From the IMG/VR virus record IMGVR_UViG_3300024308_000016, positions 62,001 through 126,000 of that record: a stretch of 64,000 nt of DNA; one strand, 5' to 3'. Made by a program: the position numbers and the translations under genes. Below, in pieces: positions 1,778 to 21,535 of the stretch. The notes beneath the pieces are model-generated. The model saw only the letters and a program-made list of their open reading frames with translations. It did no database searches and was not told the origin of the DNA. How positions within the stretch are numbered: position 1 is the first letter of the stretch; each line of letters begins with the position of its first letter.

Positions 1778-2680
1778 TTACGCTGGACCGACGTATTCAT
1801 AGTAGAGGAACATCAGATTGACGCCTCCTGAGTTTACTTGATTGGACATCGTCGACACCGCCGGAGTGATGTAGTTAACTGTCCACATACAGTTCGTATC
1901 GCCCTGTACGGTCGAACCAACCAGATATCGGCCGGCGAAGTTTGGGAATCCAAAGTTTGCCTGAACCGCTTTTGTCGAAGGGACACTATTGGCGATAGAA
2001 TCACCTAGCGACAAAAACATAGCGTCCGACATTACCCGGATCCGCCACTTATATCCCCCAACAGTAACGATTGCTTCCTCCGGATTTGTCTCCAGGAACT
2101 TGTAGAACGTCTGAAGACGCTGACCGACCCAAGAACCTACCAAATTACCATTGGCAAAAGATGCTTGAGAATTTTTAGCGATTCGGATAATGCGTCCACC
2201 ATGCAGAACTGTAAAGAACTGCATGTCTCGACTTGTATTACCTGTACCAGGAGATACATCTGACAGACCAGCCGCAGTGATCATTGAGGCCATCTTGGCA
2301 TCAGTCAGTTGGGCCTGCGTCGGCAAGGAGATGCCGCTATTTTCCTTCAGAGTCCCAAGCTGCGCTGTTCCCGAAGTTACTAGGGTCCCCATCACCTTTA
2401 GATTGTCAATCATAGCGTCGGTAAACGGACCCCAATCATCACGCCATGGTACTGAGAACTGGATACTGGCTGTCTGAACTGTGTCTTTGACAAAAACTAC
2501 AGTATAGTGCCGGACTCCATAGGTACCGGTCACAAAAGAATCCTCGATCTCATCACCGATCAGGCCGGAGAAGATTTGGGTCCCTGGGAAAACCTGAGGA
2601 TTATCCGAGGCATAGACCATGGCCGAGTCATACAGACCAGGATCACTGACCATGTTCGAAAGTGAAATAACGGGTTTCAT
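1778..2680 (-). CDS. virion tail/fibre paralog-family protein, cassette 1 gene E
   Basis: ATG 2680 overlaps upstream TGA; N-terminal beta domain then WGPF motif; matches 15819-16697. Confidence 0.65.
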   Translation of the reverse strand: MKPVISLSNMVSDPGLYDSAMVYASDNPQVFPGTQIFSGLIGDEIEDSFVTGTYGVRHYTVVFVKDTVQTASIQFSVPWRDDWGPFTDAMIDNLKVMGTLVTSGTAQLGTLKENSGISLPTQAQLTDAKMASMITAAGLSDVSPGTGNTSRDMQFFTVLHGGRIIRIAKNSQASFANGNLVGSWVGQRLQTFYKFLETNPEEAIVTVGGYKWRIRVMSDAMFLSLGDSIANSVPSTKAVQANFGFPNFAGRYLVGSTVQGDTNCMWTVNYITPAVSTMSNQVNSGGVNLMFLYYEYVGPA

Positions 2681-3576
2681 TTCAGTCCCTTGTACTCTAC
2701 GACTGCAAAAGCGCAACCATTGTTTACTGTAAGCGCCGCCGTAGTGGCGCCCATATTCGGGGTCGCTAAATTAAGACTTGGAAAGGCGACTACAGAAGTC
2801 TTTGCTGAGCTGCTATAGTCAGATGTGATCAATGGGTATGACGCATTGGACGGCGCAGCGTGTCTGGCGAGACTGAAAGGAGTCACCGTCGTTGCACTCA
2901 GTGTCGAGAGCATCATGCGTGAAAAATCCATTGTCTCGGAAATGCCGAAGGGATAGTTATTCGCCGCAGACATATTGTATTTCGTCAAGTCCAGCTCAGC
3001 ATTCGCATAGTCGAACATTTTGGAAATACGAAGGGCAAAGTTGCGGCCCTCGATTGTAATGTTGTTACCTGTATCAGTGGATCCCGAATATGCGGGGATT
3101 ACTCCATTACTCCACAAGCCTCTTTGTTGAAGAGTAGCGACCGTGGCGGCGACCTGATAAAGATAGGCGACGTACATGATTCGACCTTTTCGGATAATCT
3201 TGTACCAAACACCCGTGCTACCAGTATTCCCGCTAGTCCACATATTAGCGGAGATACCAAGAACATAGTCAGGAACCTCTCCGAAGAACCCGAGGTTCAG
3301 ATCTCCCCAGGCAATAGTCTGCGGACCTGGCCCAGTGTCTGGGCGTAATTCGGCCTTAATACTTTTAGAATAGCTGACGTCGGAGCCACGGAACGAAGCA
3401 ACTACGTAGTAACGCTCGGTATCGAACGACGGCCGTGTGTCGAGGTAATAAGTGGCGTCGCCAGCAACTGTGGCCAGCACTGACGTCGAGCTTGGGTCAG
3501 TGATGGGTGAATCCGAAGACAGGATGTCGTTACGATCTGCGTCTTCGGCGCCAGCCCATTTAAGGATAAAAGTCAT
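2677..3576 (-). CDS. phiKZ gp131-like virion tail/fibre protein, cassette 1 gene D
   Basis: FN3/Ig-like N-terminus (ILKW...YYVV), then DTGPGPQTIAWGDLNLGFFGEV signature. Confidence 0.75.
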   Translation of the reverse strand: MTFILKWAGAEDADRNDILSSDSPITDPSSTSVLATVAGDATYYLDTRPSFDTERYYVVASFRGSDVSYSKSIKAELRPDTGPGPQTIAWGDLNLGFFGEVPDYVLGISANMWTSGNTGSTGVWYKIIRKGRIMYVAYLYQVAATVATLQQRGLWSNGVIPAYSGSTDTGNNITIEGRNFALRISKMFDYANAELDLTKYNMSAANNYPFGISETMDFSRMMLSTLSATTVTPFSLARHAAPSNASYPLITSDYSSSAKTSVVAFPSLNLATPNMGATTAALTVNNGCAFAVVEYKGLK

Positions 3577-3614
3577 TTTCTCTCCTGAACTCGGAGGTCT
3601 CCCTCCGAGAATGT

Positions 3615-4652
3615 TTACTTGAATACGATCGAACTAATCGCATTAACCGGTTCTTGCACGGCCGCGATCGCTCGCGGGTAGTGTCGAATAAACCTCGGGT
3701 GGCTAACAAAATCCACTGTTTCCTGGATTGCTCGGGCAGCTGGAGCCTGAGGTGTTGGGCAGTAAGTTGATATTGCAGATTCAGCCAGGCCTGCGCTGTG
3801 AATATACAGCGGGTCGACTAGGCTGTCGCTCTGTGTGTTGAGAACATAAGCGTCATCAGTGCTTGTGCTATCGGTCACTACTGGAGACGGGTCAATTGCA
3901 TACTTCGCCAACTCCGTACTGTTGATGTACTCCAGTACCGGCCACCACCGGAAGACTGTCGCTGGAGAAATGGCGTTGATCCCTCGAAGGGAGGCACCAT
4001 TCAGAGACGACGACGACATCTGGAAATTCCCAGTCGCCGCTTGCTGCATCACGAAGAACGAAGTATTAGGATTTGCGCCAACATTACCCGGAAACAGTAC
4101 CTCGGCTGGGTTACGTTTATATCCGTACGAAGACTCGATCAGTGGGTCATACATTTGACCCAGTAGGTCAAACAACTCTCCCGTAGTCATCGCGTTAATA
4201 TTGCTCGCTGTAGCGGAAGTATCCGATACCGAGAACAAACGAACGATCAAAGCTTTAGAGTTCGACGTGATGATCCTTGGCGATTTCCACATGGGTTTGC
4301 CATTGACTGTGGTCGCGGGAACTTTTGCCGTCCCGTAGTCAGTTGCGTTGAACGATACCTGCATATCGGCAATGGCATTTGCGCTCAACCCTGGAAACTG
4401 AAACAACGGGACGTAGACCGAACGGCTCTTTCTACGAAACTTCAACCAGACTCGACTACCCCATTCTGGCATAGTGTACGGGGAGTACGCTGATGCTAGC
4501 TGGAGAAGTTGTGGTTCGACCATCAACTCACTCTCTTGCACCTCCCCCATGAAACCAAGTTCATTTGTACCTACTGTCAGATACTCTGTACCTGGACCGG
4601 AGTCTGGAACAAACTCTCTGCGACCTTTGGATCGCATCAAAAGTTCAAACAT
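3615..4652 (-). CDS. virion tail/fibre protein, cassette 1 gene C
   Basis: Starts MFELLMR after GGAG; DSGPGTEYLTVGTNELGFMGEV signature. Confidence 0.75.
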   Translation of the reverse strand: MFELLMRSKGRREFVPDSGPGTEYLTVGTNELGFMGEVQESELMVEPQLLQLASAYSPYTMPEWGSRVWLKFRRKSRSVYVPLFQFPGLSANAIADMQVSFNATDYGTAKVPATTVNGKPMWKSPRIITSNSKALIVRLFSVSDTSATASNINAMTTGELFDLLGQMYDPLIESSYGYKRNPAEVLFPGNVGANPNTSFFVMQQAATGNFQMSSSSLNGASLRGINAISPATVFRWWPVLEYINSTELAKYAIDPSPVVTDSTSTDDAYVLNTQSDSLVDPLYIHSAGLAESAISTYCPTPQAPAARAIQETVDFVSHPRFIRHYPRAIAAVQEPVNAISSIVFK

Positions 4653-4662
4653 GCCTAACTCC

Positions 4663-5496
4663 TTATTGGGGTTCCAGCACAATCCCCGCAATCATGGAGT
4701 TGCCGTTTGGAGCTGTGCTAGAGTAGTAGAAGTTGCTGGCTGCTGAATCATAAACTGCGAATACCGCAGCTCCTGAATCGTTAAGCATCCAGCTATTGCC
4801 TGGTGTGCGGGTCGATACCTGATTATAGAACCTCAGCTCTTCCGCCATTCCGCCAAAGCACAACTGGTAGGAGATGAATTCTTCCTTCGTCATCGCCCGT
4901 GCTTTAAAATCAAAGACATCGGTCGAGATGGTCTTAGTCGTATCAATCAGATTGGTTTTGAAGTTTCCGATTGCTGTAGCCGACGGCCCAGTCATGTAGA
5001 AATTAGGCTCCTCGTTAAAGAACAGGACATTTCCTTTGAATGCAATCTTACTGATCTTTGGTGGAAAACCGGGGACTGCAAAGTTATCTGTCCGAGATGC
5101 CAGAGTTATGCCCGCAGAAGCCACGTACCGCTCGCTTATGGTGCGCCATATACCGACCAGAGATCCATAAGCTTCGGTATCCAGCCTTTCCATCAATCCG
5201 TCGGAGAAATTACCGGCGATGACCTGCTGAGACCCGGGACCACACTTGGCCACCACGGCTCGTCCGATCTTAGGCACCGAGTAAATCGGCCCAAGCTGAC
5301 TGTTAGCCACAAGACCGTACCAGTAAATAGTATCGTTCTCAGCAGTTTGATCCAGCATCTGTACGGACGAACCATTCAACTGGATCGGTAACTCATTTTC
5401 AACGGAATAAAGCGTCTGAGGATTTGTCGATCGATAGCCTTTGAAGCTATCGATGGTTGCCGATGGGTCATTTTCCCAAGTAACGAGAATAGACAT
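4663..5496 (-). CDS. virion tail/fibre protein, cassette 1 gene B
   Basis: FN3-like N-terminus (ILVTW..YWYGL) and CGPGSQQVIAG signature. Confidence 0.7.
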   Translation of the reverse strand: MSILVTWENDPSATIDSFKGYRSTNPQTLYSVENELPIQLNGSSVQMLDQTAENDTIYWYGLVANSQLGPIYSVPKIGRAVVAKCGPGSQQVIAGNFSDGLMERLDTEAYGSLVGIWRTISERYVASAGITLASRTDNFAVPGFPPKISKIAFKGNVLFFNEEPNFYMTGPSATAIGNFKTNLIDTTKTISTDVFDFKARAMTKEEFISYQLCFGGMAEELRFYNQVSTRTPGNSWMLNDSGAAVFAVYDSAASNFYYSSTAPNGNSMIAGIVLEPQ

Positions 5497-5499
5497 AAT

Positions 5500-6510
5500 T
5501 TATTCCTCTACAAGTTCAAGAATAGGCCAGTATTGAGGGCAATTTGGATACATACTGCTATTTACGACCGCGTTTGTCGAATAGATGCTGTATTCACCAT
5601 TGGTCGAGTAAGTTACTCCAGACGCATCCCAAGATGTGTATGGGAGTATGTTGTTAGTCGTCTGCGGCGTAACAAACTGGGCCAATGAAGTACTATCAGC
5701 AAGCGTCTCCGCAGTGAGCATCCTTGCGCGAAAAGCAGTCAGCGGCCGAACTATAGACCCAACCTGATTGGGAAAAGCCATGCCACGGTACATTGGCAGT
5801 ATCAGCTGAGCAAACTCAGTAGAATTCTTATCCCCTTTGTCACCCAGTTTAGTTCCGTCCCAATCATCTGCGAAACCACGGGCTGTCCGAATGTTGAACG
5901 TCCACCCACCGGTCGATACTACTCGGCTCTTGCGAAACGGCGCGTACTCTGGAGCGGACGTATCAAAGTTCCACGGGATTCCAGAGGCGATTCCCTTGTT
6001 CGCCATGACCCATACAGCGGATACATGGTAACCAGTTCGCCCATAGACGGGGCGGTCTGGTACAAAGTAGATTTTATTCTTACGGCAGAATTTATACCAT
6101 ATTGCGTTTGCGGACCAGTCGTTAAGAGCGCCAAGATCAGATGAACTAGCGGCCAACGCTGTCTTCAAATCAGTGATCGGATCAGGAAGATCATAATTGT
6201 TGACTTTACCCAACAGCCCGTATCGAACATCCCCTCGAAGAAAGTCCATCGACCCTGGCCCGCGTTTGCGGAGGTCTAACTGAGTCGATGGCGCGGTCTT
6301 TACGGAATTGTACGCCGTCTTTGCTTCGATCAAGTAGGTGTACTCCATGCCTACATTGGTTGTTGTGTCAGTGTAGGTGTTGACATTTCCAGCCAGAGTA
6401 ACTATCGGTACCCCGGGGGAGTTGACATTGATTGTCTTTCCTTGGTTGCGATAGATAAGTATTTGCGCATCAGCAGTGTTTCCGCCGCGCCACTTCAAAA
6501 TGATTGCCAT
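5500..6510 (-). CDS. virion tail/fibre protein, cassette 1 gene A
   Basis: True start MAIILKW at 6510 after GGAG; RGPGSMDFLRGDVRYGLLGKV; ends WPILELVEE like 20537-21535. Confidence 0.75.
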   Translation of the reverse strand: MAIILKWRGGNTADAQILIYRNQGKTINVNSPGVPIVTLAGNVNTYTDTTTNVGMEYTYLIEAKTAYNSVKTAPSTQLDLRKRGPGSMDFLRGDVRYGLLGKVNNYDLPDPITDLKTALAASSSDLGALNDWSANAIWYKFCRKNKIYFVPDRPVYGRTGYHVSAVWVMANKGIASGIPWNFDTSAPEYAPFRKSRVVSTGGWTFNIRTARGFADDWDGTKLGDKGDKNSTEFAQLILPMYRGMAFPNQVGSIVRPLTAFRARMLTAETLADSTSLAQFVTPQTTNNILPYTSWDASGVTYSTNGEYSIYSTNAVVNSSMYPNCPQYWPILELVEE

Positions 6511-6629
6511 ATTGGTTCTCCTTATGGGAAAGTCGGGTAGTACCCAAAAGATCATTGAAAGGCCGGTATCTAGAAAATAACAACGTAGACGAGGCATAAG
6601 GTGCGAGCGCAGGCAGCGCTTGTTCCATT

Positions 6630-6651
6630 CCCCCCCCCCTTTTTTTTTTTT
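6630..6651. repeat. C10-T12 homopolymer tract
   Basis: 10 C followed by 12 T immediately before the GGAG of gene 6661. Confidence 0.9.
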
Positions 6652-6660
6652 GGAGTCTAT

Positions 6661-7203
6661 ATGAACGAAACCGTCAACCTCCTGCCCGTCATCACCAACA
6701 GCAATAGCCATCTGTTCATCGAGCAGCTGGCCAGCAACACCGACACTGAGGGCGTGCGCACAGCGCCTCTGGTGATTGGCAAGCCTTTGGACCTGATCGC
6801 TCTGACCACTCCTGGCTGGACGGTACGAGCAGTTAACCAGTATGAAGGCTTCGAAGCCCTGGGTCAGCAGCTGTCCATCAAATCTCTGGTGGTGCAGGCT
6901 GGCGAGAATTTCTACGAGCACGGCCTGAACTACCCCATCGAGCTGCACGCCAGCGGCGAAGGCAATCCTGTCGAACGTGTGTTCGGTGGCTCCGTCTCCA
7001 TCACCCTTCCTGATGGCTCCGATCTGTGGCTGCGTGTGGCTGCACGGGCGAACCTGGAAACTGGCGAAGCCCAAGTGGACATCGTCACCGATGAAGCGGC
7101 CACGTTCCGTTCGCCGGCCAACCGTGACTATCGCTTCGGCGACCTCACTACCTGGGCCCCCGTAGGCTTCACCATTGCCGGCACCATCGTGAAGCCAGAC
7201 TGA
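6661..7203 (+). CDS. protein resembling a stand-alone domain of the phiKZ-like major capsid protein
   Basis: TAPLVIGKPLDLIAL...ANLETG pattern; paralogous to the next gene. Confidence 0.5.
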   Translation: MNETVNLLPVITNSNSHLFIEQLASNTDTEGVRTAPLVIGKPLDLIALTTPGWTVRAVNQYEGFEALGQQLSIKSLVVQAGENFYEHGLNYPIELHASGEGNPVERVFGGSVSITLPDGSDLWLRVAARANLETGEAQVDIVTDEAATFRSPANRDYRFGDLTTWAPVGFTIAGTIVKPD

Positions 7204-7209
7204 GTAGTC

Positions 7210-7803
7210 ATGCAGATCTACCCTATTATCACCAAAGAGACAGAGCATCTGTTTTTGTCGCCGGATCTGTACGAGCCCTTGATCGTAAACCAGGACATGG
7301 TGAGCAACAACGCCACGGCGCCTATCGAGGCAGGTCGCTCCATGAACCTGCTCAAGATGTCGCTAGACGATGCGCTACTGAGCAACCGGGCTCAGGTCAG
7401 CCGTGTGATCTCGGTCGCTGATGTGGTGCTGCGTGTCGGCAAAGACACGCTGAGTTTTAATGTGCAGGGTCAGCCCGGCGCTGAGTTCACGGCGGAAACC
7501 GTCGACGATGCGGTGCTCAACGTGAACATGCCTCTGGTGCTGTCGGTGCGAGAAGGCACCATCTGCACCAACGAGCAGCCTCTGCGCACGCTCATCATTC
7601 CCAAGGACGGCGCTGTGGTGATCCTGGGCCAGCTCACTGGTTCCGTGAATCTGGAGTCGGGCATCGCTCAATTCCAGATCCAGCTGACAGGCACCCGGGT
7701 GCTGCAAGGCGGCAAGCGCATCGAGTGCGCTGTCACCGAGCGCGATGTGCTCCAGTCCAAGGATCACTACCTGACGCTGATCATGCATACGCTCCATCCC
7801 TGA
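7210..7803 (+). CDS. protein resembling a stand-alone domain of the phiKZ-like major capsid protein
   Basis: TAPIEAGRSMNLL...VLRVGKDTLSFNV...LTGSVNLESG pattern. Confidence 0.55.
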   Translation: MQIYPIITKETEHLFLSPDLYEPLIVNQDMVSNNATAPIEAGRSMNLLKMSLDDALLSNRAQVSRVISVADVVLRVGKDTLSFNVQGQPGAEFTAETVDDAVLNVNMPLVLSVREGTICTNEQPLRTLIIPKDGAVVILGQLTGSVNLESGIAQFQIQLTGTRVLQGGKRIECAVTERDVLQSKDHYLTLIMHTLHP

Positions 7804-7811
7804 ACCATCTG

Positions 7812-7847
7812 CCCCTCTACTCCCGGACGCAAGTCCAGGAGTAGGGG
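7812..7847 (+). terminator. hairpin terminator
   Basis: CCCCTCTACTCCCGGAC-GCAA-GTCCAGGAGTAGGGG after gene 7210-7803. Confidence 0.6.
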
Positions 7848-7854
7848 AGGTCTG

Positions 7855-7892
7855 TTTGTAGATCTTCACGGTCACTTACACTTTACCTGAGG
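7855..7892 (+). promoter_or_regulatory. phage promoter copy P1
   Basis: TTTGTAG-N8-GGTCACTTACACTTTACCTGAGG; one of 8 copies. Confidence 0.75.
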
Positions 7893-7934
7893 CATCCTGC
7901 TTCATTATCTTGTCAACTCAATAGGAAAGCTCAA

Positions 7935-8731: not shown

Positions 8732-8741
8732 GGAACTCATC

Positions 8742-9338: not shown

Positions 9339-9342
9339 CATC

Positions 9343-9753: not shown

Positions 9754-9795
9754 TCCACGCATAACAGCAACCCCTTTTCTCTGGAAATCATCTCA

Positions 9796-11571: not shown

Positions 11572-11589
11572 TCTTCATCTGAGTTGATG

Positions 11590-12413: not shown

Positions 12414-12416
12414 CTC

Positions 12417-13046: not shown

Positions 13047-13083
13047 TCCGCGGCTGACCCCCTCATCTCAAGGAGAATACCCT

Positions 13084-13776
13084 ATGACGCAAGAAAGCGC
13101 AGCAGCTGACGTGATGGTGACCGCGGAAACCCGCCTGATCCATGTCCCCACTCAGGCTTATCCGGTCACGCTGGCCACGGTCAAACTGCCGGTGCTCGTC
13201 AGTTTCGGCAAGGAAGTACCCCTGTCGTACCTGAAGGAGCAAGGCGGCTATGACATCGTGCACCTGGCCGCCGCACCCATGGGTGATGTGGTCACCGAGA
13301 CCCAGCCAGCCATGGACTCCGAAGGCCGCTGGACTCAGCAGTACCATGTACGCGACTTCGATGCCAACGAACTCAAGGATCGCCTGGACGCAGCCAAGGT
13401 CGTGGCCGATTCGGTGCGCCTGAACGAGCAAAACGAGATCCTGGCCAAGGGCGCCGAATTTGACTTCGGCGGCGAGCATGGTGTGCAACACGCGCAGATG
13501 CGCTCCATGGACCGCGTCAATGTCTCGGGTCTGGCCATCAAGGTGCTTCGCAACCCCGAACACACCGACGTGTTTTGCACCTTCGAAAACAAGGTCATCC
13601 CTGTGGACGCAGCTGCCATCACGGCGCTGAGCGACCGCGTGCTGGCCGCCTATACCCGCGTCATGGCCGAAAGCTGGACGCTGCGTGAGCTGATCGAGTC
13701 CGCCACCAAGGTCAGCGACATCCCCACTGCTGCCGACATCAAGGCGATCTTCACCGATGCTGTCAAGCTGAGCTAA
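13084..13776 (+). CDS. DUF4376-like tail fibre assembly-associated protein
   Basis: AAGGAG upstream; QQYHVRD...RNEILAKGAEFDF...DRVNVSGL pattern typical of fibre chaperones. Confidence 0.55.
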   Translation: MTQESAAADVMVTAETRLIHVPTQAYPVTLATVKLPVLVSFGKEVPLSYLKEQGGYDIVHLAAAPMGDVVTETQPAMDSEGRWTQQYHVRDFDANELKDRLDAAKVVADSVRLNEQNEILAKGAEFDFGGEHGVQHAQMRSMDRVNVSGLAIKVLRNPEHTDVFCTFENKVIPVDAAAITALSDRVLAAYTRVMAESWTLRELIESATKVSDIPTAADIKAIFTDAVKLS

Positions 13777-13787
13777 TCAGTGTGCAT

Positions 13788-13832
13788 CATACCCCACCAT
13801 CCCGGCCTTGCGGCCGGGATGGTGGGAGTATG
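13788..13832. terminator. long hairpin between convergent genes
   Basis: CCCACCATCCCGGCC-TTGC-GGCCGGGATGGTGGG, 15 bp stem. Confidence 0.75.
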
Positions 13833-13837
13833 TCGAC

Positions 13838-14986
13838 TTATGTACCGTACAGGACTTCGTGATTGACAAAATCACCAATAAACCAATTGTCAGTGGTCCG
13901 GGCCAAAGACAGCGCCCTGTATGCGTCTGGTCGACCGCGTACTTGCGTCCACTTACGTGTAGCAGTCCAGTCGGGGTTGAAGTCATAGCGCAACAGGTAG
14001 CCAGTAGTAGCGCCTGAGACATACGCCGCGATCAACATGTACGACTTATCCGCCGACATCCTGATACCGCCGCCGAAATAGCGAATCTCTCCAACGTCAG
14101 AAGGAGGTAAGATGGTTGCTTTATGTTCGAAGACATCGATGCCGTCGAACACATAAACATAAATTCCACCCGTATAGTTGGACCCGCCGTTTGTCTGGGT
14201 AGGGGCGCCTACCAGGATAACGGTACCGTCATCAGACACCTCAACAGCTGACCCAAAGTTCGACCCCGCTACAACGTTTGGCATTGTCAGCCACCCCACC
14301 AAATGCCAATCCGGATATCCTCGGAAGACTCCGATTCGATTTTGAGACGGCACACCAACGACCATTGTAGAGAGATTGCGGCTGATCTGAATGATGTTCG
14401 CAGATCCAACTGTGCCAGACAGATCAATCCGATTGAACGCAGTCCAGGAGCTGCCTAGATAAGTGAACGTATGGATGCGGCCATTGTTGGAGTTCTCCCC
14501 CGGTGCCAAAACAGCCATGTACGTGCCATCGGGGCTCAGGGCTACAGAGTTACCGAAATAGCCGTTATTGACCGGCGACGGGGAAACGGTCCTGAATTTA
14601 CTCCATGAGCCGTCACCATTTAGCGTGTACGTCATCACGAAGCCCTGGTTACCGTCGTTGTTGTAGCTTGCTCCCCCGGACACAAAGAACGTACAGTCGC
14701 TATTGCTGGCAAACGTCTTCAAGTTACCACTGTTGGCCGCAGTTGAGGAATCGGTCATCACTGACTCCTGAACCATCAGACCATTTTGAGTCTTGAATGT
14801 GTAGATAGACGCCAGAGCCTGGGTGTCGTAGGGCGCACAAAACGCAGCTCGCTGCCCATCCGCCGAGATCAGTGTCTGAGCGGGGAAGAACTGGTAGGTG
14901 CGCTTCGGGTTGAGTGCCGGTACATTGATGATCCGACCTGTTGCACCGGATTCAGCTTTGGCTGCACCTGTGAGAAGTTCCAGCAT
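13838..14986 (-). CDS. FG-GAP-like beta-propeller virion/adhesin protein
   Basis: Starts MLELLTG; repeats FGNSVALSPDG..AVLAPGE, FGSAVEVSDDG..LVGAP, FGGGIRMSAD. Confidence 0.75.
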   Translation of the reverse strand: MLELLTGAAKAESGATGRIINVPALNPKRTYQFFPAQTLISADGQRAAFCAPYDTQALASIYTFKTQNGLMVQESVMTDSSTAANSGNLKTFASNSDCTFFVSGGASYNNDGNQGFVMTYTLNGDGSWSKFRTVSPSPVNNGYFGNSVALSPDGTYMAVLAPGENSNNGRIHTFTYLGSSWTAFNRIDLSGTVGSANIIQISRNLSTMVVGVPSQNRIGVFRGYPDWHLVGWLTMPNVVAGSNFGSAVEVSDDGTVILVGAPTQTNGGSNYTGGIYVYVFDGIDVFEHKATILPPSDVGEIRYFGGGIRMSADKSYMLIAAYVSGATTGYLLRYDFNPDWTATRKWTQVRGRPDAYRALSLARTTDNWFIGDFVNHEVLYGT

Positions 14987-14993
14987 AGTTGCC

Positions 14994-15758
14994 TCATGTC
15001 GGAAGGTTGGGGACCTCATTAGGAGGTACGAACTGCAGAATTGGCAACCACAGGCACTCCTTGCTGGAGCCGCCGATCAAGTACCGACCACGACTGCCAT
15101 TGGCCGCGGAGACGACCACCGTGATCATCTGGTTGGAATCATGGGAGGGGTGTTGGCAAAACACTTCCGGATTGCGGCCTGCGTAGGCGGGCTCGAAGTC
15201 ACTCAGCGGCAGCTTCCAGGCATTGGCGTATTCGCTGGCTGGGAAATAGGGTCGGTAAATCAGATCGAGAACTTCCCCGTTTTTGACGGGATCATTGCCG
15301 GTGTACTGGATGAACTTGACACCATCTTGATCCAGCAAGTTACGGGCAAACACCGTAGAGCCGTCACTGGTGGTGAACGTTTGATTCATGGTGTATGCGG
15401 TTTTTCCGATCATCGGGAACCTGGGGATCTCCGATGACGGCAGCAGCGCGTTGTAGTACACCTTGGTGTCGAAGTTCCATGCGAACAGTGTCCGACCAAT
15501 GGGGAACTGCGGCACATAGAGCACCTTACCTTTGCGGATAAACTTGCCCCACATATTGGTCGCTGGTGCGTCAGTGAAGTCGCGCTTATTCGAAGGCAGC
15601 AAAGCAGCCAGCTTCGAGCCCATGCCCAACACGGAGTCAGGTACACGGCCAAAGTAGCCATAGTCTTCAGTGCCCAGAGTGAGTACCTTGGTGCCGGGAC
15701 CCGACCAGGGGATTGTGCCGGGGGCTGGCGAGGACTCACGGGTGATTAGTTCAAGCAT
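14994..15758 (-). CDS. virion tail/fibre paralog, gene C type, short
   Basis: Starts MLELITR; WSGPGTKVLTLGTEDYGYFGRV signature. Confidence 0.75.
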   Translation of the reverse strand: MLELITRESSPAPGTIPWSGPGTKVLTLGTEDYGYFGRVPDSVLGMGSKLAALLPSNKRDFTDAPATNMWGKFIRKGKVLYVPQFPIGRTLFAWNFDTKVYYNALLPSSEIPRFPMIGKTAYTMNQTFTTSDGSTVFARNLLDQDGVKFIQYTGNDPVKNGEVLDLIYRPYFPASEYANAWKLPLSDFEPAYAGRNPEVFCQHPSHDSNQMITVVVSAANGSRGRYLIGGSSKECLWLPILQFVPPNEVPNLPT

Positions 15759-15818
15759 AATGTTTCTCCTATCAATTTATCTCTGATCCCTGGGCTATCC
15801 TGCCCAGGGATCAGAGCT

Positions 15819-16697
15819 TTACGCAGGCCCGATGTATTTCAGAGCGATAAGGACGTAGACAGCCGAGACCGTCCCCGTGGGTTCATTGAACGTCAGCGTG
15901 GTGCCGGTGTTGTCGATGTTCACTACTTTGCCTTGCTCATTCAAGGCCACGAATGTCGATGTGCGCGACACCGAAGAAGCCGTGTATTGAATAGGCGTGG
16001 TTGCAGGTGGGTTGATCAGCCAGCTATTGCCGATACTGCGTGCCATTGGCTCTGTGATGGCCACAGCCTTGTACTTGTAGCCACCGAACGTGTAGACGTT
16101 AGCCGTGGTGGCTGGGTTGTTCAAGTAAGAGGTCAGAGCCCAGACATTGGTGAGTACATCAGCGGCGGCCATGGATGTATTGCCCACACGGAAGATGTTC
16201 TCCAGATCCCAGGGGATCAGGTAGATCTGGCCTTCGATCACCACAGGCTCCCAAGTCGCAGCAGCTCCATTGGGTGATGGGCTATCGGCTACATTGCAGC
16301 CTGTGGTCACCAGAGCTGGCCAGTTGGTGACCAACGCTTGTGTAGGCTGAGCAGGAGCCGGCAGCATCACACCAACTTGTCCGCATCCGCGCGTGGTGAT
16401 CTTACGCGTGGAGGAGAACGCCGCAGGCATCCCCGGGAAGAAGGGACCGAAGTCCTCGATGTACATGTAGCTGAACGCCTGCAGCGGGATGAAGAACTCC
16501 CCTCCCGCATGCTTGTACTCTACACGGTACCACCACAAGCCTGGGTAGATGACAGACTCATCTGTGTAGGTATCGACATATGCGCCGGTGTATACGGGGG
16601 AGCCCTTGCCAAGATCGGCCCGTGTATCAGCGCGCCAGATACGGATGCTGGTGTCCTGGGTTGCTCCAGGGATATTGAGTTTGAAGCTCGGTTTCAT
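15819..16697 (-). CDS. virion tail/fibre protein, cassette 2 gene E
   Basis: Starts MKP; FGPF motif; ends LKYIGPA versus YEYVGPA in 1778-2680. Confidence 0.7.
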   Translation of the reverse strand: MKPSFKLNIPGATQDTSIRIWRADTRADLGKGSPVYTGAYVDTYTDESVIYPGLWWYRVEYKHAGGEFFIPLQAFSYMYIEDFGPFFPGMPAAFSSTRKITTRGCGQVGVMLPAPAQPTQALVTNWPALVTTGCNVADSPSPNGAAATWEPVVIEGQIYLIPWDLENIFRVGNTSMAAADVLTNVWALTSYLNNPATTANVYTFGGYKYKAVAITEPMARSIGNSWLINPPATTPIQYTASSVSRTSTFVALNEQGKVVNIDNTGTTLTFNEPTGTVSAVYVLIALKYIGPA

Positions 16698-16703
16698 ATT
16701 CAG

Positions 16704-17591
16704 TTACTCCTGAAACAGTTCCATGATCGGGATGAAGGAGTTGTTGGCCGAAGTCAACCCCACTGTGACGATCCCCAGTCCCACCGCAGATGCGTTGGGC
16801 ACTGTGGCCCACCCGAGCATGGCCGAACGATTGGCCGCTCCATAATCCGATGTGATGGTCGGTACACTGGAGGCAAAAGTGCTGTGCGCAAACCGGAAAG
16901 GAGCTGCGGAAGAGCGAGCCAAAGCACGCACCATGATCCGGTACAGGTCCAGAAATTCGGACTGGCCGAATGGCATGCCGTCAGCGAAATTCAGGCTGTA
17001 GCTACTGGATTCCACCAGTGTGTTGTTGTAGTCGTACAGCTTGGCGATGCGAGTATAGTACTGGCGAAAGCCGACCACACGCGTGGGAGCTGGTGCCTCC
17101 GGACCATACAAAGGAGTGATGCCGCCGCGCAGCAAGTTGGCTGCTTCCAAGGCAGTGGCGTTCTTGCCGGTATTGATCACAGGCGCACCCACATACAGGA
17201 TGCGTCCGCGATATGCGATCTTGAAGTAGCGAGAGTCAGGAGCGCTGTTGTACCAGTTAGATACGGGAAAGCCCACTTCGTAGTCATTGACCACGCCATA
17301 AAAGCCCAAGAACAAATCGCCCCACAGCAGCTCCTGAGGACCTGGGCCGGTGTCGGGCACGATGCGAACATTCAGTTCACGGGAGAAGGCGCTCTTGCCG
17401 TCAGCCTCCACCTTCAGTAGGTAGTACACCTGACCGCCCAAAGGCGCGGTGGCGTCCAGATAAGACTGCTCATTGCTAGTGAGAGTGACCAGCGGAGCTG
17501 GCAGGTTTTGCTGATCGATCGGAGAGTCGGAGCGATACAGCATCAGTGTCGAAGGGTTGTTCGGATTGACCCAGCTGACAAGTGCGGACAT
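16704..17591 (-). CDS. phiKZ gp131-like virion tail/fibre protein, cassette 2 gene D
   Basis: FN3-like N-terminus; DTGPGPQELLWGDLFLGFYGVV; clearly alignable to 2677-3576. Confidence 0.75.
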   Translation of the reverse strand: MSALVSWVNPNNPSTLMLYRSDSPIDQQNLPAPLVTLTSNEQSYLDATAPLGGQVYYLLKVEADGKSAFSRELNVRIVPDTGPGPQELLWGDLFLGFYGVVNDYEVGFPVSNWYNSAPDSRYFKIAYRGRILYVGAPVINTGKNATALEAANLLRGGITPLYGPEAPAPTRVVGFRQYYTRIAKLYDYNNTLVESSSYSLNFADGMPFGQSEFLDLYRIMVRALARSSAAPFRFAHSTFASSVPTITSDYGAANRSAMLGWATVPNASAVGLGIVTVGLTSANNSFIPIMELFQE

Positions 17592-17644
17592 GTTGTTTCC
17601 TTTTGAATGAAGAGGCTGCGCCTTCGGGCGCAGCCTGTAGGCAG

Positions 17645-19639
17645 TTATGCCACGAGTTTTGTCGGATCAAACACCGACAGCTGATTACGAGGACGATTGT
17701 CGTCGTAGGCGCCGGGTCGATTGGGGTTGGTTCCGGGACCCACCCAGATCTTACCGTCATTTTGCAGACCGCACACTCCAAGCGATTGAGGCGGGATGCC
17801 CAACGCTTTGATGCGAACGCTGTTGTCCGACAGATCCAAAATCACCGCATACGCCACCGATGGGGAAACATCGCTGAAGCCGCCGATGGCCACAACTTTG
17901 TTGTTCACCACTGTCGCTTGTCCGATGGCTTTGAAGCCATACGTCGTGGGCATTGGTAAAGTGCTCCAGGTGTTGGATGCGATATCATAGACCCGGATCA
18001 CGGTGTTCCAGGTATTGGTAGAACCTGTGGTGTTGAGGCCACCGATCAAGTACACCTTGGTAGGAGTCGCGGCCAGGGCTGCATAGTACAGTCCCATCCC
18101 AGGAGGAGCGATGACGGACCAGGTGTTGGTCGCCACATCGTACAAACCCGCTTCGTTGTAAGTCGTTCCAGACAAGTTGTAGCCGCCCACCAACATGATC
18201 TTGTTTTGCGTCGGCAAAGAGCAGACATTGGTGACCACTCGAGTGGAACCCGGAGTGGCGGCATGAGCTGTCGGTGACGAGGGGTTCGCAACAGGCCAAC
18301 TGTACATGTTTTTGGTCTGGCTGCCGGCGATGTAGCCATTCATCATGTAAAAGCGGCCGTTGTGCGTGCATCCTGAGTACCAGGTAAAGCCCGAGGGAGT
18401 TCCTGGAGCGATACGGCGCTTGGTCTTGGTGACAAAGTTGAAGACCGACATGTACGCCGGATACTTATCTTCCCCACCGCCTTGCGTTCCACCCATGCCA
18501 AACGGTGTATACATCTCATTGCCGTTGACCCATCCGGAGCAGCACTGAATCGCGGTGCCTTCATAGACAGCTTCCGGACGCACAACGTCTGGAGAAACCG
18601 GGAAAGATCGGGAGATCTGACCTGGTTCATTAAACGATTGCACGCCCGTGATCATCGGTGCCACAAAGCTCATCTGAGCGTATTCTTCGAACTTGATGAC
18701 CGGACCACGCGCAGAGCGCAGAACCGGGGAACGCAGACCTTCTACAGTCATCGTTGGTAGCACGATCGACTGATCCAAAGGAGCTCGGAAGTTGTACGGC
18801 GGAAGCATAGACTCAGCGATTCCCCAGATCACGGGCTGAGAATTCACCGCATCCGACCAACTCTCCAAATTGCTGATCGGCAGTGCGAGCTTCTTCTTGT
18901 CGTCTGTTGTCAGCAGTTGCACCACCGGAAGCCAGACCGTAGTATTGCCCATGGAGGTCTGAGCAACCTTATTCATGTCCGCATTGGTGGTATCGAGTCG
19001 AAGCACTGAACCCACTGTCGAGGAGATGATCTCTACCCCGCTAGTGTTGGCTTGTTGACCGGCAGTGACGCCGTTGATGTAGCTCGCCGGCAGCCGGATC
19101 CCCTGCGGATTAGTCCAATTGGCACCGAACACAGATACGATCAGGTTGTAGGCTTCAGATTCCGTGCTGAGCACTTCATCATAGACCACTGATGTCGCAT
19201 TGGGCTTGAGGTCGATCAGGCGCGGGAACAGCAAGTCCTTATTAGGGGCTGTATACACAGGGTTCATGTCGTACATGGGGCTGCCATCCGGCAGTGTGGC
19301 TGGGGCATCAGCCGTGCCGCGCTTCAGGCCGCTGTACGTCATCTTGGCCGCTTGCAGCTGGTTATACGTCACCAGCGCCGTCTTGAACGTTGGGATGAAA
19401 ACAACCGAGCCTTTGAAGAAGAACTTCATCCACTGATTGTCCGCGCTAGCGGAGTACAGTCGGGAAGCTTCCGGGATCTGGGCGTCATCCAACATCTTGG
19501 TGAAGAAACCCAGCTCCACTTCTGGAACCAGGCCAAAGAAGCCCAGATCCGTGTTCCCCATCCGCAGGTATTTGGTACCTGGTCCGCTGTCGGAGTAGTA
19601 CGGCAGGTGGGAAGACTGCCGCATGAAGATTTCAAACAT
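17645..19639 (-). CDS. virion tail/fibre protein with C-terminal Kelch-like propeller, cassette 2 gene C
   Basis: MFEIFMR...DSGPGTKYLRMGNTDLGFFGLV; Kelch repeats IMLVGG..YDVATNTW and VYLIGG..YDIASNTW. Confidence 0.8.
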   Translation of the reverse strand: MFEIFMRQSSHLPYYSDSGPGTKYLRMGNTDLGFFGLVPEVELGFFTKMLDDAQIPEASRLYSASADNQWMKFFFKGSVVFIPTFKTALVTYNQLQAAKMTYSGLKRGTADAPATLPDGSPMYDMNPVYTAPNKDLLFPRLIDLKPNATSVVYDEVLSTESEAYNLIVSVFGANWTNPQGIRLPASYINGVTAGQQANTSGVEIISSTVGSVLRLDTTNADMNKVAQTSMGNTTVWLPVVQLLTTDDKKKLALPISNLESWSDAVNSQPVIWGIAESMLPPYNFRAPLDQSIVLPTMTVEGLRSPVLRSARGPVIKFEEYAQMSFVAPMITGVQSFNEPGQISRSFPVSPDVVRPEAVYEGTAIQCCSGWVNGNEMYTPFGMGGTQGGGEDKYPAYMSVFNFVTKTKRRIAPGTPSGFTWYSGCTHNGRFYMMNGYIAGSQTKNMYSWPVANPSSPTAHAATPGSTRVVTNVCSLPTQNKIMLVGGYNLSGTTYNEAGLYDVATNTWSVIAPPGMGLYYAALAATPTKVYLIGGLNTTGSTNTWNTVIRVYDIASNTWSTLPMPTTYGFKAIGQATVVNNKVVAIGGFSDVSPSVAYAVILDLSDNSVRIKALGIPPQSLGVCGLQNDGKIWVGPGTNPNRPGAYDDNRPRNQLSVFDPTKLVA

Positions 19640-19654
19640 ATTGGCTCCTTTGGG

Positions 19655-20533
19655 TCAATCCGCCGGAGTCATCACGTACAGCGGGTAGCAGATGGCGTTG
19701 GTTGCGAATGCGTCCGTCAACGTGGCCTCCACCGCCGTCATGATGTACGGGCGTGCTCCGACAGGCGCTCGCAAGCGGTACAGTTTTCCGTCCTTTTGAG
19801 CCAGCACATAGTGGTTGGCATATGCGGGGATGGGCTGCTCCACCGAACGGATCATCCAGCCATTGAGGTTGGTGGGGCCGCCCGAGTTCTTGCTCCAGTA
19901 CTGCATGGCGTGGTCCAGATCCATCAGCTGGATCCGAAGACGAAATCCCTGGTATTCAAAGAAGACGCCGTCATTCAAGATGGATGCGACCGTTGTATCG
20001 AACGTCTGGCGCTGAGCAGCTGATGTGAATGTTCCGTACGTCATGAAGTCCGCTGGCATGAAGTACACCTTGCCACCGATGGTCAGCTTGGAGACCAGCG
20101 ATCCGTACTGACCGGGCACGATGGAGCTGGTGGTGCGGTTGAGTACAGTCAGTTGGGTGGACAGAGCCGAGAACAGCACCGAGTTCGACGCACCGAACAG
20201 ATCGGGCATGTTGGTAGCAGACGTGGCGTCCAGCATCCCTGACTCCATGGAGCCACGGGTGACATTGATGCCACCAGGACCAGCGGAGTTCACGTACTGG
20301 ATGGCGAGGATGGGCTTGGACTGCATGGTCCCCAGTGGAGTCAGGGACTCCACACCGTAGTAGTACACGGTGTCGGGTTGAATAGTCGTATCCTCGTAGT
20401 CCAGCGTCGTAGTGGCGAACTCCTGCAGCAGGTTGGCTGCGTCGAACAAGTTGGCCTTGGTGGCGCTTCGGTAAACCCGAAAGCCGGAGACGTTGCCGTT
20501 GTAGGCGTTCGCCCATTTGAGTTTGATAGACAT
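19655..20533 (-). CDS. virion tail/fibre protein, cassette 2 gene B
   Basis: FN3-like N-terminus (KLKW..FRVYRS..YYYGVE); AGPGG signature. Confidence 0.75.
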   Translation of the reverse strand: MSIKLKWANAYNGNVSGFRVYRSATKANLFDAANLLQEFATTTLDYEDTTIQPDTVYYYGVESLTPLGTMQSKPILAIQYVNSAGPGGINVTRGSMESGMLDATSATNMPDLFGASNSVLFSALSTQLTVLNRTTSSIVPGQYGSLVSKLTIGGKVYFMPADFMTYGTFTSAAQRQTFDTTVASILNDGVFFEYQGFRLRIQLMDLDHAMQYWSKNSGGPTNLNGWMIRSVEQPIPAYANHYVLAQKDGKLYRLRAPVGARPYIMTAVEATLTDAFATNAICYPLYVMTPAD

Positions 20534-20536
20534 TGT

Positions 20537-21535
20537 TTATTCCTCGATGAGTTGCAGCACAGGCCACAGAGCTGGAGCGCCACCATTACGCCACTTTGCT
20601 AGGATTTGGTCAGCGCTGCTCGAATTGTAGGTATTGACGATGTAGTAACCCTTCACCCAGTCGGCGACGATGGCGTAATTATGGTCGTAGACACCATACT
20701 CACACATCAGTGTCTCATTGGACTGAGGAAGGGCCTCAGCAGCAATGTACCTCATGAAGGTTACACCTTGAGCCCAGATCTGAGGAGTGACCGAACCCAC
20801 CTGGTTGCCAATGATGCAGCCTTGCATCATAGACTGGATGAGCTGGTTCATCTCGGTGTCGCGCTGCAGCGTCAGGGCCGCATTGTGTACACCGTTCCAG
20901 TTGTCTGGATATGCTCGGGGAGCACGCAAGTGAAAGCGGTCTATTCCCGCTGTCAAGATCTTGGTCTTGCGATAGGGGTTGTATTTGGCCGCCGAGATGT
21001 CGAAGTTCCAGTCCAGGCCAGAAGCAATACCAGGCACATTGGCCGCCCAGATGCCACCCAACCACGGATCGTAGTCGTTGTACGTGGTGGTCATGGGGAT
21101 AGAAGGCACATACATTATCTTGCCCTTGCGTACAAACTTGTACCACTTGAGCACAGCCATTGCGGCATTAGTCTTTCCACGCTCAAAGCCCAGAGCTGTC
21201 CACACATCAGGCAGCTCATAGCTGGGAACTTGGCCCATATAACCGAACTCGCTGTCGCCGGTGAGAATGTCTACGCCACCGGGACCTACACGGCGCAGGT
21301 TGGCTGTTACCGTTGGTCGCGAGAAGCTCGAGCCCAAAGGAGCGCGGATCTCCACCAAGTAGGCATACGTTTTGCCAGGTTCAGTGGTGTTGTCGACATA
21401 GGCGACGGCGTTAGAGTCCAGAGTAGCGATCGCTGTGCCTTTGCTGGCTTCAGTGATGGTGGTGCCCTCGTTACGGTAGATATACAGGGAGTTGCCAGGA
21501 GTGTTCTGGTTGCTCCATTTCAGATGGATAGCCAT
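20537..21535 (-). CDS. virion tail/fibre protein, cassette 2 gene A
   Basis: MAIHLKW; VGPGGVDILTGDSEFGYMGQV; ends WPVLQLIEE. Confidence 0.75.
   Translation of the reverse strand: MAIHLKWSNQNTPGNSLYIYRNEGTTITEASKGTAIATLDSNAVAYVDNTTEPGKTYAYLVEIRAPLGSSFSRPTVTANLRRVGPGGVDILTGDSEFGYMGQVPSYELPDVWTALGFERGKTNAAMAVLKWYKFVRKGKIMYVPSIPMTTTYNDYDPWLGGIWAANVPGIASGLDWNFDISAAKYNPYRKTKILTAGIDRFHLRAPRAYPDNWNGVHNAALTLQRDTEMNQLIQSMMQGCIIGNQVGSVTPQIWAQGVTFMRYIAAEALPQSNETLMCEYGVYDHNYAIVADWVKGYYIVNTYNSSSADQILAKWRNGGAPALWPVLQLIEE

What the first reader, a model, noticed from the sequence alone, without database searches (positions are those of the whole stretch)
1778..21535. Two parallel five-gene tail/adhesin cassettes with identical gene order
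Genes 6510-5500, 5496-4663, 4652-3615, 3576-2677 and 2680-1778 pair one-to-one, in order, with 21535-20537, 20533-19655, 19639-17645, 17591-16704 and 16697-15819. Starts: MAIILKW/MAIHLKW, MSILVTW/MSIKLKW, MFELLMR/MFEIFMR, then shared DTGPGPQ..WGD, then MKPV/MKPS. Ends also match (WPILELVEE/WPVLQLIEE; YVGPA/YIGPA). All carry a GP(G/F)-x-G..G(F/Y)G core with divergent C-termini, and cassette 1 looks more AT-rich. Inference: the cassette is a heteromeric fibre assembly unit and the phage builds two alternative fibre types.
Basis: partly seen in the sequence, partly recalled or inferred. Interest (0 to 1): 0.6.

Follow-up and report, generated by a model that had tools for sequence, protein, structure and literature searches.

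The report
Duplicated jumbo-phage virion protein arrays

Summary
Ten minus-strand genes pair one-to-one and in the same order: A 34%, B 27%, C 26%, D 29%, E 26% identity, all reciprocal best hits. Array 1 has lower GC (49-50% against 54-58%).

- The genes show no detectable similarity to phiKZ gp131-135. This phage's gp130/gp131-like genes lie elsewhere in its 272-kb genome.
- They belong to PHROG 1062/3589, which includes SPN3US gp145-153 ('paralog family B') and phiKZ gp83.
- Published mass spectrometry finds gp145-153 in tail-less SPN3US heads at full, low, portal-like levels.

Proteins A, B, D and E are an FN3 domain plus a ~250-residue core with no confident solved match; the weak hits are mostly C-type-lectin/FGE folds. 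C-type proteins lack FN3. C2 adds a Kelch propeller, as phiKZ gp83 does.

Array 2 really has seven genes (A-G; G is an FG-GAP propeller) and is syntenic in three related phages. Conserved hairpins divide it as (A B C)|(D E)|(F G).

Array 1 was exchanged horizontally. A 5.4-kb block is 95% identical in a phage whose flanking genes are 24-77% identical, and at least 99% identical in pieces from a wastewater run.

Best reading: exchangeable arrays of low-copy, probably head- or neck-borne binding proteins. Location and function are inferred.

The parts
5500..6510 (-). A1, 336 aa: N-terminal FN3 domain plus GPG core
   Evidence: phrog_1062, E 7e-34. 97% identical in L009.
4663..5496 (-). B1, 277 aa: FN3 plus diverged core
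   Evidence: 98% identical in L009.
3615..4652 (-). C1, 345 aa: core without FN3, plus a ~95-aa C-terminal extension; begins MFELL
2677..3576 (-). D1, 299 aa: FN3 plus core, A-like
1778..2680 (-). E1, 300 aa: the most diverged member, pairs only with E2
   Evidence: hhalign E1-E2 probability 98%.
1129..6492 (.). Horizontally exchanged block: array 1 plus most of the neighbouring 253-aa gene (958-1719, plus strand)
   Evidence: blastn 94.7% over 5.5 kb against L009 while flanking genes are 24-77% aa identical. The same breakpoints appear in runs from four studies. GC is 49-50%.
20537..21535 (-). A2, 332 aa: FN3 (residues 1-81) plus core (82-332)
   Evidence: AF2 model pLDDT 92.3. FN3 match Z 9-10. 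Orthologs 52-65% identical.
19655..20533 (-). B2, 292 aa: FN3 plus core
17645..19639 (-). C2, 664 aa: core (1-~250), linker, Kelch beta-propeller (~420-664); same plan as phiKZ gp83
   Evidence: Pfam PF24681, 69 bits against a cut-off of 50..
16704..17591 (-). D2, 295 aa: FN3 plus core, A-like
   Evidence: hhalign A2-D2 probability 99.1%.
15819..16697 (-). E2, 292 aa: diverged FN3-like N-terminus plus core; weakly B-like
   Evidence: hhalign B2-E2 probability 46% over 218 columns.
14994..15758 (-).
   Evidence: blastp against C2 E 6e-16. phrog_3589 E 1e-18. hhalign C2-F2 99.7%.
13838..14986 (-). G2, 382 aa from Met12: FG-GAP beta-propeller protein with the C/F-type N-terminal motif MLELL; last gene of array 2
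   Evidence: PF14312, 42.7 bits against a cut-off of 23. Start and length match relatives.
1724..1772 (-). Hairpin after E1 (end of array 1, convergent with the 253-aa gene)
   Evidence: dG -34.3, z -7.7. Conserved in L009.
3590..3609 (-). Hairpin between C1 and D1
   Evidence: dG -15.6, z -2.1, weak. The same hairpin is present in L009.
17613..17636 (-). Hairpin between C2 and D2
   Evidence: dG -23, z -4.0. A hairpin sits at the same place in L011 and L005.
15781..15816 (-). Hairpin between E2 and F2
   Evidence: dG -34.8, z -6.6. Conserved position in L011 and L005.
13789..13832 (-). Hairpin after G2 (end of array 2, convergent with the DUF4376 gene 13084-13776)
   Evidence: dG -43.5, z -7.6. 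Conserved position in L011 and L005.

Best explanation
The window holds two diverged paralogous arrays of one jumbo-phage virion-protein family, the 'GPG-core' family (PHROG 1062/3589). SPN3US gp145-153 and phiKZ gp83 belong to it.

Array 2 (A2-G2, seven genes) is the resident, syntenic array of this phage lineage. Array 1 (A1-E1) is a foreign copy of the first five positions. It arrived recently by recombination with a lower-GC relative and is kept under strong purifying selection.

The proteins combine an FN3 domain, a ~250-residue core (possibly a C-type-lectin-like binding domain) and, in C2 and G2, beta-propellers. Conserved hairpins and tiny intergenic gaps make each array three co-expressed sub-units: (A B C), (D E), (F G).

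By homology, the products are low-copy virion components that travel with the head or neck rather than the tail. I infer that they are surface-exposed accessory binding proteins that help the particle attach to host or environmental glycans. I also infer that gaining a second array adds binding specificities rather than swapping a tail fibre.

Shown: paralogy, family membership, domain content, operon punctuation, horizontal exchange.
Inferred: virion location, binding function, whether the products assemble together.
For: Paralogy and order:
-.

Family:
- PHROG hits.
- blastp to SPN3US gp145-153 and Phobos gp146-154.
- phrog_1062 finds nine places in SPN3US, nine in this genome and one in phiKZ, which is gp83.
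- C2's Kelch part also hits gp83.

Location of homologs:
- SPN3US gp145-153 are present in tail-less heads at a head/wild-type ratio of 1.06-1.67, like the major capsid protein (1.39) and portal (1.40).
- Their PSM/kDa is 1.2-4.5 against 3.9 for the portal (PMC10052503, PMC5694885, PMC5105663).

Domains:
- FN3, Z 9-10.
- Kelch and FG-GAP score above the Pfam cut-offs.
- The core model has pLDDT 90. About 40 of its 50 weak VIA matches are C-type-lectin/FGE folds, including phage Mtd and DGR variable proteins.

Fast evolution:
- Array-2 orthologs are 29-55% identical, while the YAcAr, 152-aa and DUF4376 neighbours are 66-77%.

Horizontal exchange:
- (dN/dS 0.04-0.07).

Punctuation conserved in three phages:
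-.

Precedent:
- The phiKZ Kelch virion protein gp298 is needed for adsorption to some strains.
Against: - There are no virion data for this phage. Location is transferred from homologs that are only 25-35% identical.
- phiKZ gp83 is not placed in either cryo-EM study. That fits a flexible external protein but equally fits an internal one.
- The lectin-like match is weak: best Z 4.7 and rmsd over 4 A. Foldseek and a profile search of PDB sequences found nothing.
- The phiKZ gp298 authors regard that Kelch protein as tail-associated.
- Association among the proteins is untested.
Confidence: 0.55

Rival explanations
1. One reading: each cassette encodes a heteromeric tail fibre of the phiKZ gp131-135 kind, and the phage builds two alternative tail-fibre types.
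For: - The phiKZ fibre is a hetero-hexamer of paralogs encoded side by side, and gp131 ends in a beta-propeller.
- C2 and G2 also carry propellers.
- The phiKZ Kelch protein gp298 acts in adsorption.
Against: - There is no sequence or profile similarity to gp131-135.
- The phage has its own gp130/gp131-like genes elsewhere in the genome.
- The SPN3US homologs gp145-153 stay with tail-less heads, while the gp131-like gp168-170 vanish.
- phiKZ gp83 is annotated as a head protein and is not among the modelled tail proteins.
Confidence: 0.12
2. They are internal head proteins that are packaged with the DNA and ejected into the host. Their diversity would then come from an arms race with host defences.
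For: - The homologs are head-associated.
- The SPN3US authors marked two abundant family-B members (gp141, gp160) as 'Head ejection?'.
- phiKZ gp83 is unseen in icosahedral maps.
Against: - gp141 and gp160 are DUF7941-type proteins, not GPG-core proteins. DUF7941 was not found in this phage.
- FN3, Kelch and FG-GAP are typical extracellular binding modules.
- No family-B member is among the SPN3US proteins processed by the prohead protease.
- Copy number is portal-like rather than high.
Confidence: 0.13
3. They are structural capsid or vertex cement proteins with no binding role. The paralogs would occupy different quasi-equivalent positions on a large capsid.
For: - The homologs are head-associated.
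- phiKZ capsids carry many minor proteins, and one decoration protein, gp244, matters only at low temperature.
Against: - The estimated copy number is low.
- Divergence is very fast, and whole arrays are exchanged between phages with different capsid proteins.
- The number of arrays varies from one to three among relatives.
- None of the family is resolved in the phiKZ capsid map.
Confidence: 0.12
4. On origin: array 1 arose by duplication of array 2 inside this genome, not by import.
For: The two arrays have the same gene order and the same family. Tandem expansions of this family occur in SPN3US and Phobos.
Against: - The arrays are only 26-34% identical, yet array 1 is 95% (L009) to at least 99% (run X4) identical to copies in other phage backgrounds.
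- Its GC content and codon usage are foreign to this genome.
- A relative, L008, lacks it at the same site.
Confidence: 0.05

Closest known systems
Salmonella phage SPN3US 'paralog family B', members gp145-153 (Thomas 2016, PMC5105663; Ali 2017, PMC5694885; 2023, PMC10052503)
   Same: - Homologous GPG-core proteins, with blastp E down to 6e-21 and hhalign probabilities of 99%.
- Tandem arrays of repeated multi-gene units.
- Both have FN3-plus-core forms and forms without FN3.
   Different: - SPN3US has three tandem three-gene units in one run. Its long members carry an N-terminal DUF7941 domain shared with gp138-144 and gp154.
- Here the arrays are separated by 7 kb of opposite-strand genes, no DUF7941 was found, and C2 and G2 carry propellers.
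- Function is unknown in both.
phiKZ gp83 (annotated 'structural head protein')
   Same: It has the same plan as C2: a GPG-core N-terminus plus a Kelch propeller.
   Different: - phiKZ has a single copy, found with phrog_1062 only.
- gp83 is not located in the published capsid or tail structures.
phiKZ gp131-135 hetero-hexameric tail fibre (PMC13250141); SPN3US paralog family C, gp168-170
   Same: Adjacent paralogous virion genes, and a distal beta-propeller in gp131. This is an analogy of organisation only.
   Different: - No homology.
- Those proteins are tail-borne.
- This phage encodes its own copies elsewhere.
phiKZ gp298, a Kelch-domain low-copy virion protein (PMC12676376)
   Same: A Kelch-bearing accessory virion protein. 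It is dispensable on the laboratory host but needed for adsorption to some wild strains.
   Different: It lacks the GPG core and was not hit by C2's Kelch domain at E <= 0.01. Its authors assign it to the tail.
C-type-lectin-fold phage receptor binders (Bordetella phage Mtd, DGR variable proteins TvpA and TaqVP) and invasin/intimin (Ig-like domains plus a C-terminal lectin-like domain)
   Same: These dominate the weak structural matches of the core. Ig-like/FN3 followed by a lectin-like head is the same design logic; that comparison rests on my own knowledge.
   Different: - Z is only 2.8-4.7.
- The genome has no reverse transcriptase, so it has no DGR.
- No sequence motif is shared.
- Iyer et al. 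2021 reported no such domains in jumbo phages.

Membership tests
phiKZ gp131-135 tail-fibre paralog family | Homology to the gp131-like N-terminal domain | tested here: not met
   No blastp hit at E < 0.01. hhalign probability 0.1-1.1%.
phiKZ gp131-135 tail-fibre paralog family | Position next to the gp130 homolog in the tail module | tested here: not met
   The gp130/gp131-like genes lie at genome positions ~205.0-206.7 kb, with another gp131-like gene at 168.6-171.1 kb. The window covers 62-126 kb.
phiKZ gp131-135 tail-fibre paralog family | The protein is lost from tail-less particles | not testable with these tools
   Published data cover the SPN3US homologs only, and those are retained in heads.
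SPN3US paralog family B / PHROG 1062 and 3589 (GPG-core subgroup) | Sequence homology of the core | tested here: met
   - phrog_1062 E 7e-34 to 8e-15 for A1, C1, D1, A2, B2, C2, D2 and F2.
- B1 is joined only through the 27% B1-B2 pair, blastp to SPN3US gp153 (E 4e-10) and a marginal genomic phrog_1062 hit (E 8e-4).
- E1 and E2 join only through alignment and a weak hhalign link to B2.
SPN3US paralog family B / PHROG 1062 and 3589 (GPG-core subgroup) | Tandem arrays of paralogs in phiKZ-related jumbo phages | tested here: met
   The genome is phiKZ-related: portal, gp130 and gp131 homologs are present.
SPN3US paralog family B / PHROG 1062 and 3589 (GPG-core subgroup) | DUF7941 domain, carried by gp138-144, gp154 and the N-termini of gp145/148/151 | tested here: not met
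   PF25613 was not found in the genome, but the tool's controls were silent too. The genes therefore belong to the core subgroup only.
SPN3US paralog family B / PHROG 1062 and 3589 (GPG-core subgroup) | Head association in the virion | not testable with these tools
   Requires proteomics of this phage.
phiKZ gp83-like (core plus Kelch) | GPG core followed by a Kelch propeller in one protein (applies to C2) | tested here: met
   hhalign C2-gp83 probability 94.8%, C1-gp83 88.4%.
Fibronectin type III domain | Seven-strand beta-sandwich superposable on solved FN3 domains | tested here: met
   A2 residues 1-81: Z 8.2-9.8, rmsd 1.9-2.9 A over 70-79 residues. The same profile region matches FN3-repeat giant proteins.
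C-type lectin / FGE fold | Clear structural superposition on solved members | tested here: inconclusive
   Best Z 4.7 with rmsd 4.4-4.8 A over ~145 residues. The list is dominated by this fold, but every row is below the tool's trust level. Foldseek found nothing.
C-type lectin / FGE fold | Association with a diversity-generating retroelement, as in Mtd, TvpA and TaqVP | tested here: not met
   No RVT_1 in the genome. No template/variable repeat pair.
Kelch and FG-GAP beta-propellers | Pfam score above the gathering cut-off | tested here: met
   C2: PF24681 69.4 bits against 50, and PF01344 53 against 20.1. G2: PF14312 42.7 against 23.

The most novel reading that the evidence does not exclude
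Chimallivirus-type jumbo phages would carry a second host- or environment-recognition layer on the head or neck. It would be made of low-copy units of the form [FN3-core, FN3-core, core-propeller], with a divergent C-type-lectin-like core as the binding module. These units would be encoded in hairpin-punctuated arrays that are swapped whole between distantly related phages, much as tail-fibre cassettes are swapped in small phages.
Probability: 0.25. Interest if true: 0.7.

Novelty: new member of a known kind. Interest (0 to 1): 0.42.

Why it matters
This family is one of the largest unexplained paralog expansions in any phage, with about 20 members in SPN3US. It has no assigned function or position in the virion.

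This locus adds four things:
- A domain-level description: FN3, a core with only weak lectin-like matches, and Kelch or FG-GAP propellers.
- A conserved operon grammar.
- Clear evidence that a five-gene block moves between otherwise diverged jumbo phages and is kept under purifying selection.
- A correction to an easy mis-annotation as tail fibres.

Together these make the family look like an exchangeable binding system and give concrete targets for proteomics, cryo-ET and knock-outs.

Tried and rejected
- Megablast of both arrays against 50,697 phage records found no match.
- The search for related loci failed twice: the single protein gave nothing and the alignment was too diverged.
- The genome search could not reach the ENA contig, so I walked it with the look-up of encoding contigs instead.
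- PDB sequence searches found nothing for the core, either with A2 alone or with a 68-sequence profile.
- Foldseek against PDB matched only the FN3 domain of the full model and nothing for the core model.
- The DGR idea is rejected: no reverse transcriptase and no template/variable repeats.
- The sigma-70 promoter and simple terminator scan was uninformative, with fewer promoter-like sites than in shuffles.
- The language-model atlas gave only sub-threshold DUF6273 neighbours at score 0.85.
- tblastn of flanking genes against Phobos and SPN3US found no hit.
- No listed run holding the stretch is on record as RNA, so there is no expression evidence.
- No alternative genetic code was used.
- Read laying was given 6,000 letters.


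Full report
**Context**

The window is bases 62,001-126,000 of a 272,393-bp IMG/VR phage record. CheckV rates it complete, and its GC is 55.9%. The phage is related to phiKZ. tblastn finds homologs of phiKZ portal gp129 (E 2e-79), gp130 and the N-terminal domain of gp131 elsewhere in the genome.

**Observation**

All-vs-all blastp gives five reciprocal best pairs in the same order:

| Pair | Identity | E-value |
|---|---|---|
| A1-A2 | 34% | 7e-60 |
| B1-B2 | 27% | 4e-15 |
| C1-C2 | 26% | 2e-21 |
| D1-D2 | 29% | 4e-44 |
| E1-E2 | 26% | 7e-7 |

- The quoted terminal motifs and the GP..G..G core are real.
- Array 1 has 48.8-50.6% GC against 54.2-57.8% for array 2. Array 1 also scores poorly with the genome's codon usage.
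F2 (14994-15758) is a C-type paralog. G2 (13838-14986) is an FG-GAP propeller protein.

**What the family is**

- Pfam recognises only the Kelch propeller of C2 and the FG-GAP repeat of G2.
- PHROGs places A, C, D, F and B2 in phrog_1062 and phrog_3589, which are virion structural proteins of unknown function.
- tblastn finds the family in 89 jumbo-phage records of Erwinia, Salmonella, Pseudomonas, Ralstonia and Cronobacter phages. It is always multi-copy there.
- blastp and hhalign link the genes to SPN3US gp145-153 and Phobos gp146-154.
- In phiKZ, phrog_1062 finds one gene, gp83, annotated 'structural head protein'.
- gp83 has a Kelch propeller after the core, exactly as C2 does.
- phiKZ gp131-135 give no blastp hit and hhalign probabilities of at most 1.1%.
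- SPN3US counts gp145-153 in 'paralog family B'. Its gp131-like proteins, gp168-170, form a separate 'family C'.

**Where homologs sit in the virion**

The evidence comes from the supplementary table of PMC10052503 and from an independent tail-less mutant.

| SPN3US protein | PSM ratio, tail-less heads (mutant 255am107) / wild type |
|---|---|
| gp145-153 | 1.06-1.67 |
| Major capsid protein | 1.39 |
| Portal | 1.40 |
| gp168-170 (gp131-like) | 0.004-0.013 |
| Tail sheath | 0.03 |

- A second tail-less mutant, 64(am27), gave the same assignment.
- PSM per kDa is 1.2-4.5 for gp145-153 against 3.9 for the 12-copy portal. My rough inference is a handful to a dozen copies per particle, not a capsid-wide coat.
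- No family-B member is among the proteins cut by the prohead protease.
- phiKZ gp83 appears in neither the capsid map nor the whole-virion atlas. Its place is therefore unknown.

**Domains**

- An AlphaFold2 model of A2, built from 63 sequences, has pLDDT 92.3.
- Residues 1-81 are an FN3 domain, with Z 8.2-9.8 and rmsd about 2-3 A. The same stretch matches FN3 repeats of giant proteins in the 1.8-billion-protein profile search. That search also shows about a hundred clusters of full-length 290-345-aa relatives.
- The core alone (residues 82-332; pLDDT 90, pTM 0.90) has no Foldseek match in PDB.
- By exhaustive alignment the core has only weak matches, with Z at most 4.7. About 40 of the 50 listed rows are C-type-lectin or FGE-fold proteins: PvdO, TvpA, Legionella Lcl, EgtB, animal lectins, phage Mtd, TaqVP and invasin. 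This is a coherent hint, not a demonstration.
- Structural neighbours in BFVD and the ESM Atlas are other jumbo-phage virion proteins.
- A, B, D and E are FN3 plus core. C and F lack FN3.
- C, F and G all begin with the motif M-hydrophobic-E-hydrophobic-hydrophobic.
- C2 is core plus Kelch. F2 plus G2 look like the same plan split into two genes.
- Among orthologs, the last third of the core is the most variable part in A2 (0.34 identity) and C2 (0.23).

**Organisation**

- Gaps A-B, B-C, D-E and F-G are 3-15 nt. In array 1, D1 and E1 overlap by 4 nt.
- Strong hairpins follow C, E and the last gene in both arrays.
- Hairpins with different stem sequences sit at the same places in two related phages.
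- The arrays therefore read (A B C)|(D E)|(F G). Array 1 ends exactly at the hairpin that is internal to array 2.
- Profile comparison gives D as A-like (probability 99.1%), F as C-like (99.7%) and E as weakly B-like (46%).
- This suggests an older repeat of the form [FN3-core, FN3-core, core(+propeller)]. SPN3US and Phobos show the same period of three.

**History**

- Array 2 is syntenic in three metagenomic relatives. It always lies between a DUF4326/YAcAr gene and a DUF4376 gene.
- Its proteins are 25-55% identical across the relatives. Against the Logan relative they are 29-52% identical, while the YAcAr, 152-aa and DUF4376 neighbours are 66-77%.
- One relative (L005/L008) lacks array 1 at the corresponding site but has other extra family genes just upstream of A.
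- Another relative (L009/L011, a 182.5-kb Logan contig, local GC about 51%) has array 1 at the same site, plus three more genes of A, B and C type.
- Between that phage and the window, array 1 and most of the adjacent 253-aa gene are 94.7% identical in DNA and 97-98% in protein. dN/dS is 0.04-0.07.
- Every other gene around the block is 24-77% identical in protein.
- One breakpoint lies within the first ~27 nt of A1, at the conserved N-terminal motif.
- Contigs from runs of four studies carry the same block with the same ends (window 1129-6492). A wastewater run has pieces at least 99% identical.
- Array 1 is therefore a recently exchanged module. Its GC fits the L009-type phage rather than this one, so import into this lineage is the likelier direction. 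That direction is an inference.

**Interpretation**

Shown:
- There are two paralogous arrays of a known but uncharacterised jumbo-phage virion family.
- One array is native and one is imported.
- Both are intact and constrained.
- They are built from binding-type modules and organised in conserved sub-units.

Inferred:
- The products are on the head or neck at low copy, by homology to SPN3US.
- They act as accessory binders for host or environmental ligands.
- A second array adds specificities.

The phiKZ Kelch protein gp298 is needed for adsorption only on some strains. It shows that such accessory virion proteins can matter for host range.

Rivals are a tail location, internal ejected proteins, and purely structural cement. 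Each is scored separately, and none is excluded by direct data for this phage.

**Novelty and limits**

- The family and its tandem expansion are published (PMC5105663, PMC5694885).
- As far as the searched literature shows, these points are new: the split into two arrays, the conserved hairpin grammar, the FN3-plus-possibly-lectin-like description, the match of C2 to phiKZ gp83, and the documented exchange of a five-gene block.
- A survey of jumbo phages reported no C-type-lectin-fold (FGS) domains. The fold hint would be of interest if confirmed.
- The large profile search was used once because the family scans left the proteins open.

Noticed in passing
window 6601-7203 and 7210-7803 (+): Two tandem ~200-aa genes each match weakly the same segment (about positions 140-255) of the PhiKZ major-capsid-protein family PF25620. 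E-values are 7e-4 and 1.4e-5, both below the cut-off. Relatives carry the same pair. They may be capsid-protein-derived fragments of unknown role.
   Followed up: partly
window 21662-22942 (+): A gene divergent from A2 encodes a fusion of DUF4326 and a YAcAr/SLOG domain. It is the conserved left neighbour of array 2 in all relatives, at 61-76% identity.
   Followed up: no
window 13084-13776 (+): A DUF4376 protein (phrog_4998) lies convergent with G2. It is the conserved right neighbour of array 2 in relatives. Whether it is a chaperone for the array products is unknown.
   Followed up: no
genome positions ~205.0-206.7 kb and 168.6-171.1 kb (outside the window): The phage's real gp130/gp131-like baseplate and fibre genes are here, including an 822-aa gp131-like ORF at 168,628-171,096.
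   Followed up: partly
window 5489-5529 and 20526-20566: The A/B gene junction (end of A, stop codon, 3-nt gap, start of B) is the only stretch conserved at DNA level between the two arrays: 41 nt at 78% identity.
   Followed up: no
L011 1147-3978 (= L009 6957-9788): The relative that shares array 1 has three more family genes (A3 326 aa, B3 283 aa, C3 331 aa) directly upstream of A1, followed by a 212-nt gap with a long hairpin. It therefore carries 15 array genes in all, 14 of them family members.
   Followed up: partly
L005 4757-9862: Another relative has a different extra set next to its array 2 and no array 1. The set includes a 337-aa A-like, a 259-aa D-like and a 251-aa C/F-like gene, plus genes of 109, 517 and 206 aa. 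The number of sets varies within the lineage.
   Followed up: partly
window 16338-17420 (+), 20606-21580 (+), 5500-7248 (-): Long ORFs lie antisense to or extend the array genes (360, 324 and 582 aa). They are by-products of high GC and long open frames, not genes. They overlap well-supported genes and have no homologs.
   Followed up: partly
window 801-6800 in public runs: The exchanged block or parts of it occur in subsurface, wastewater, soil, plant and compost metagenomes from 13 studies. The source sample is a subsurface metagenome.
   Followed up: partly
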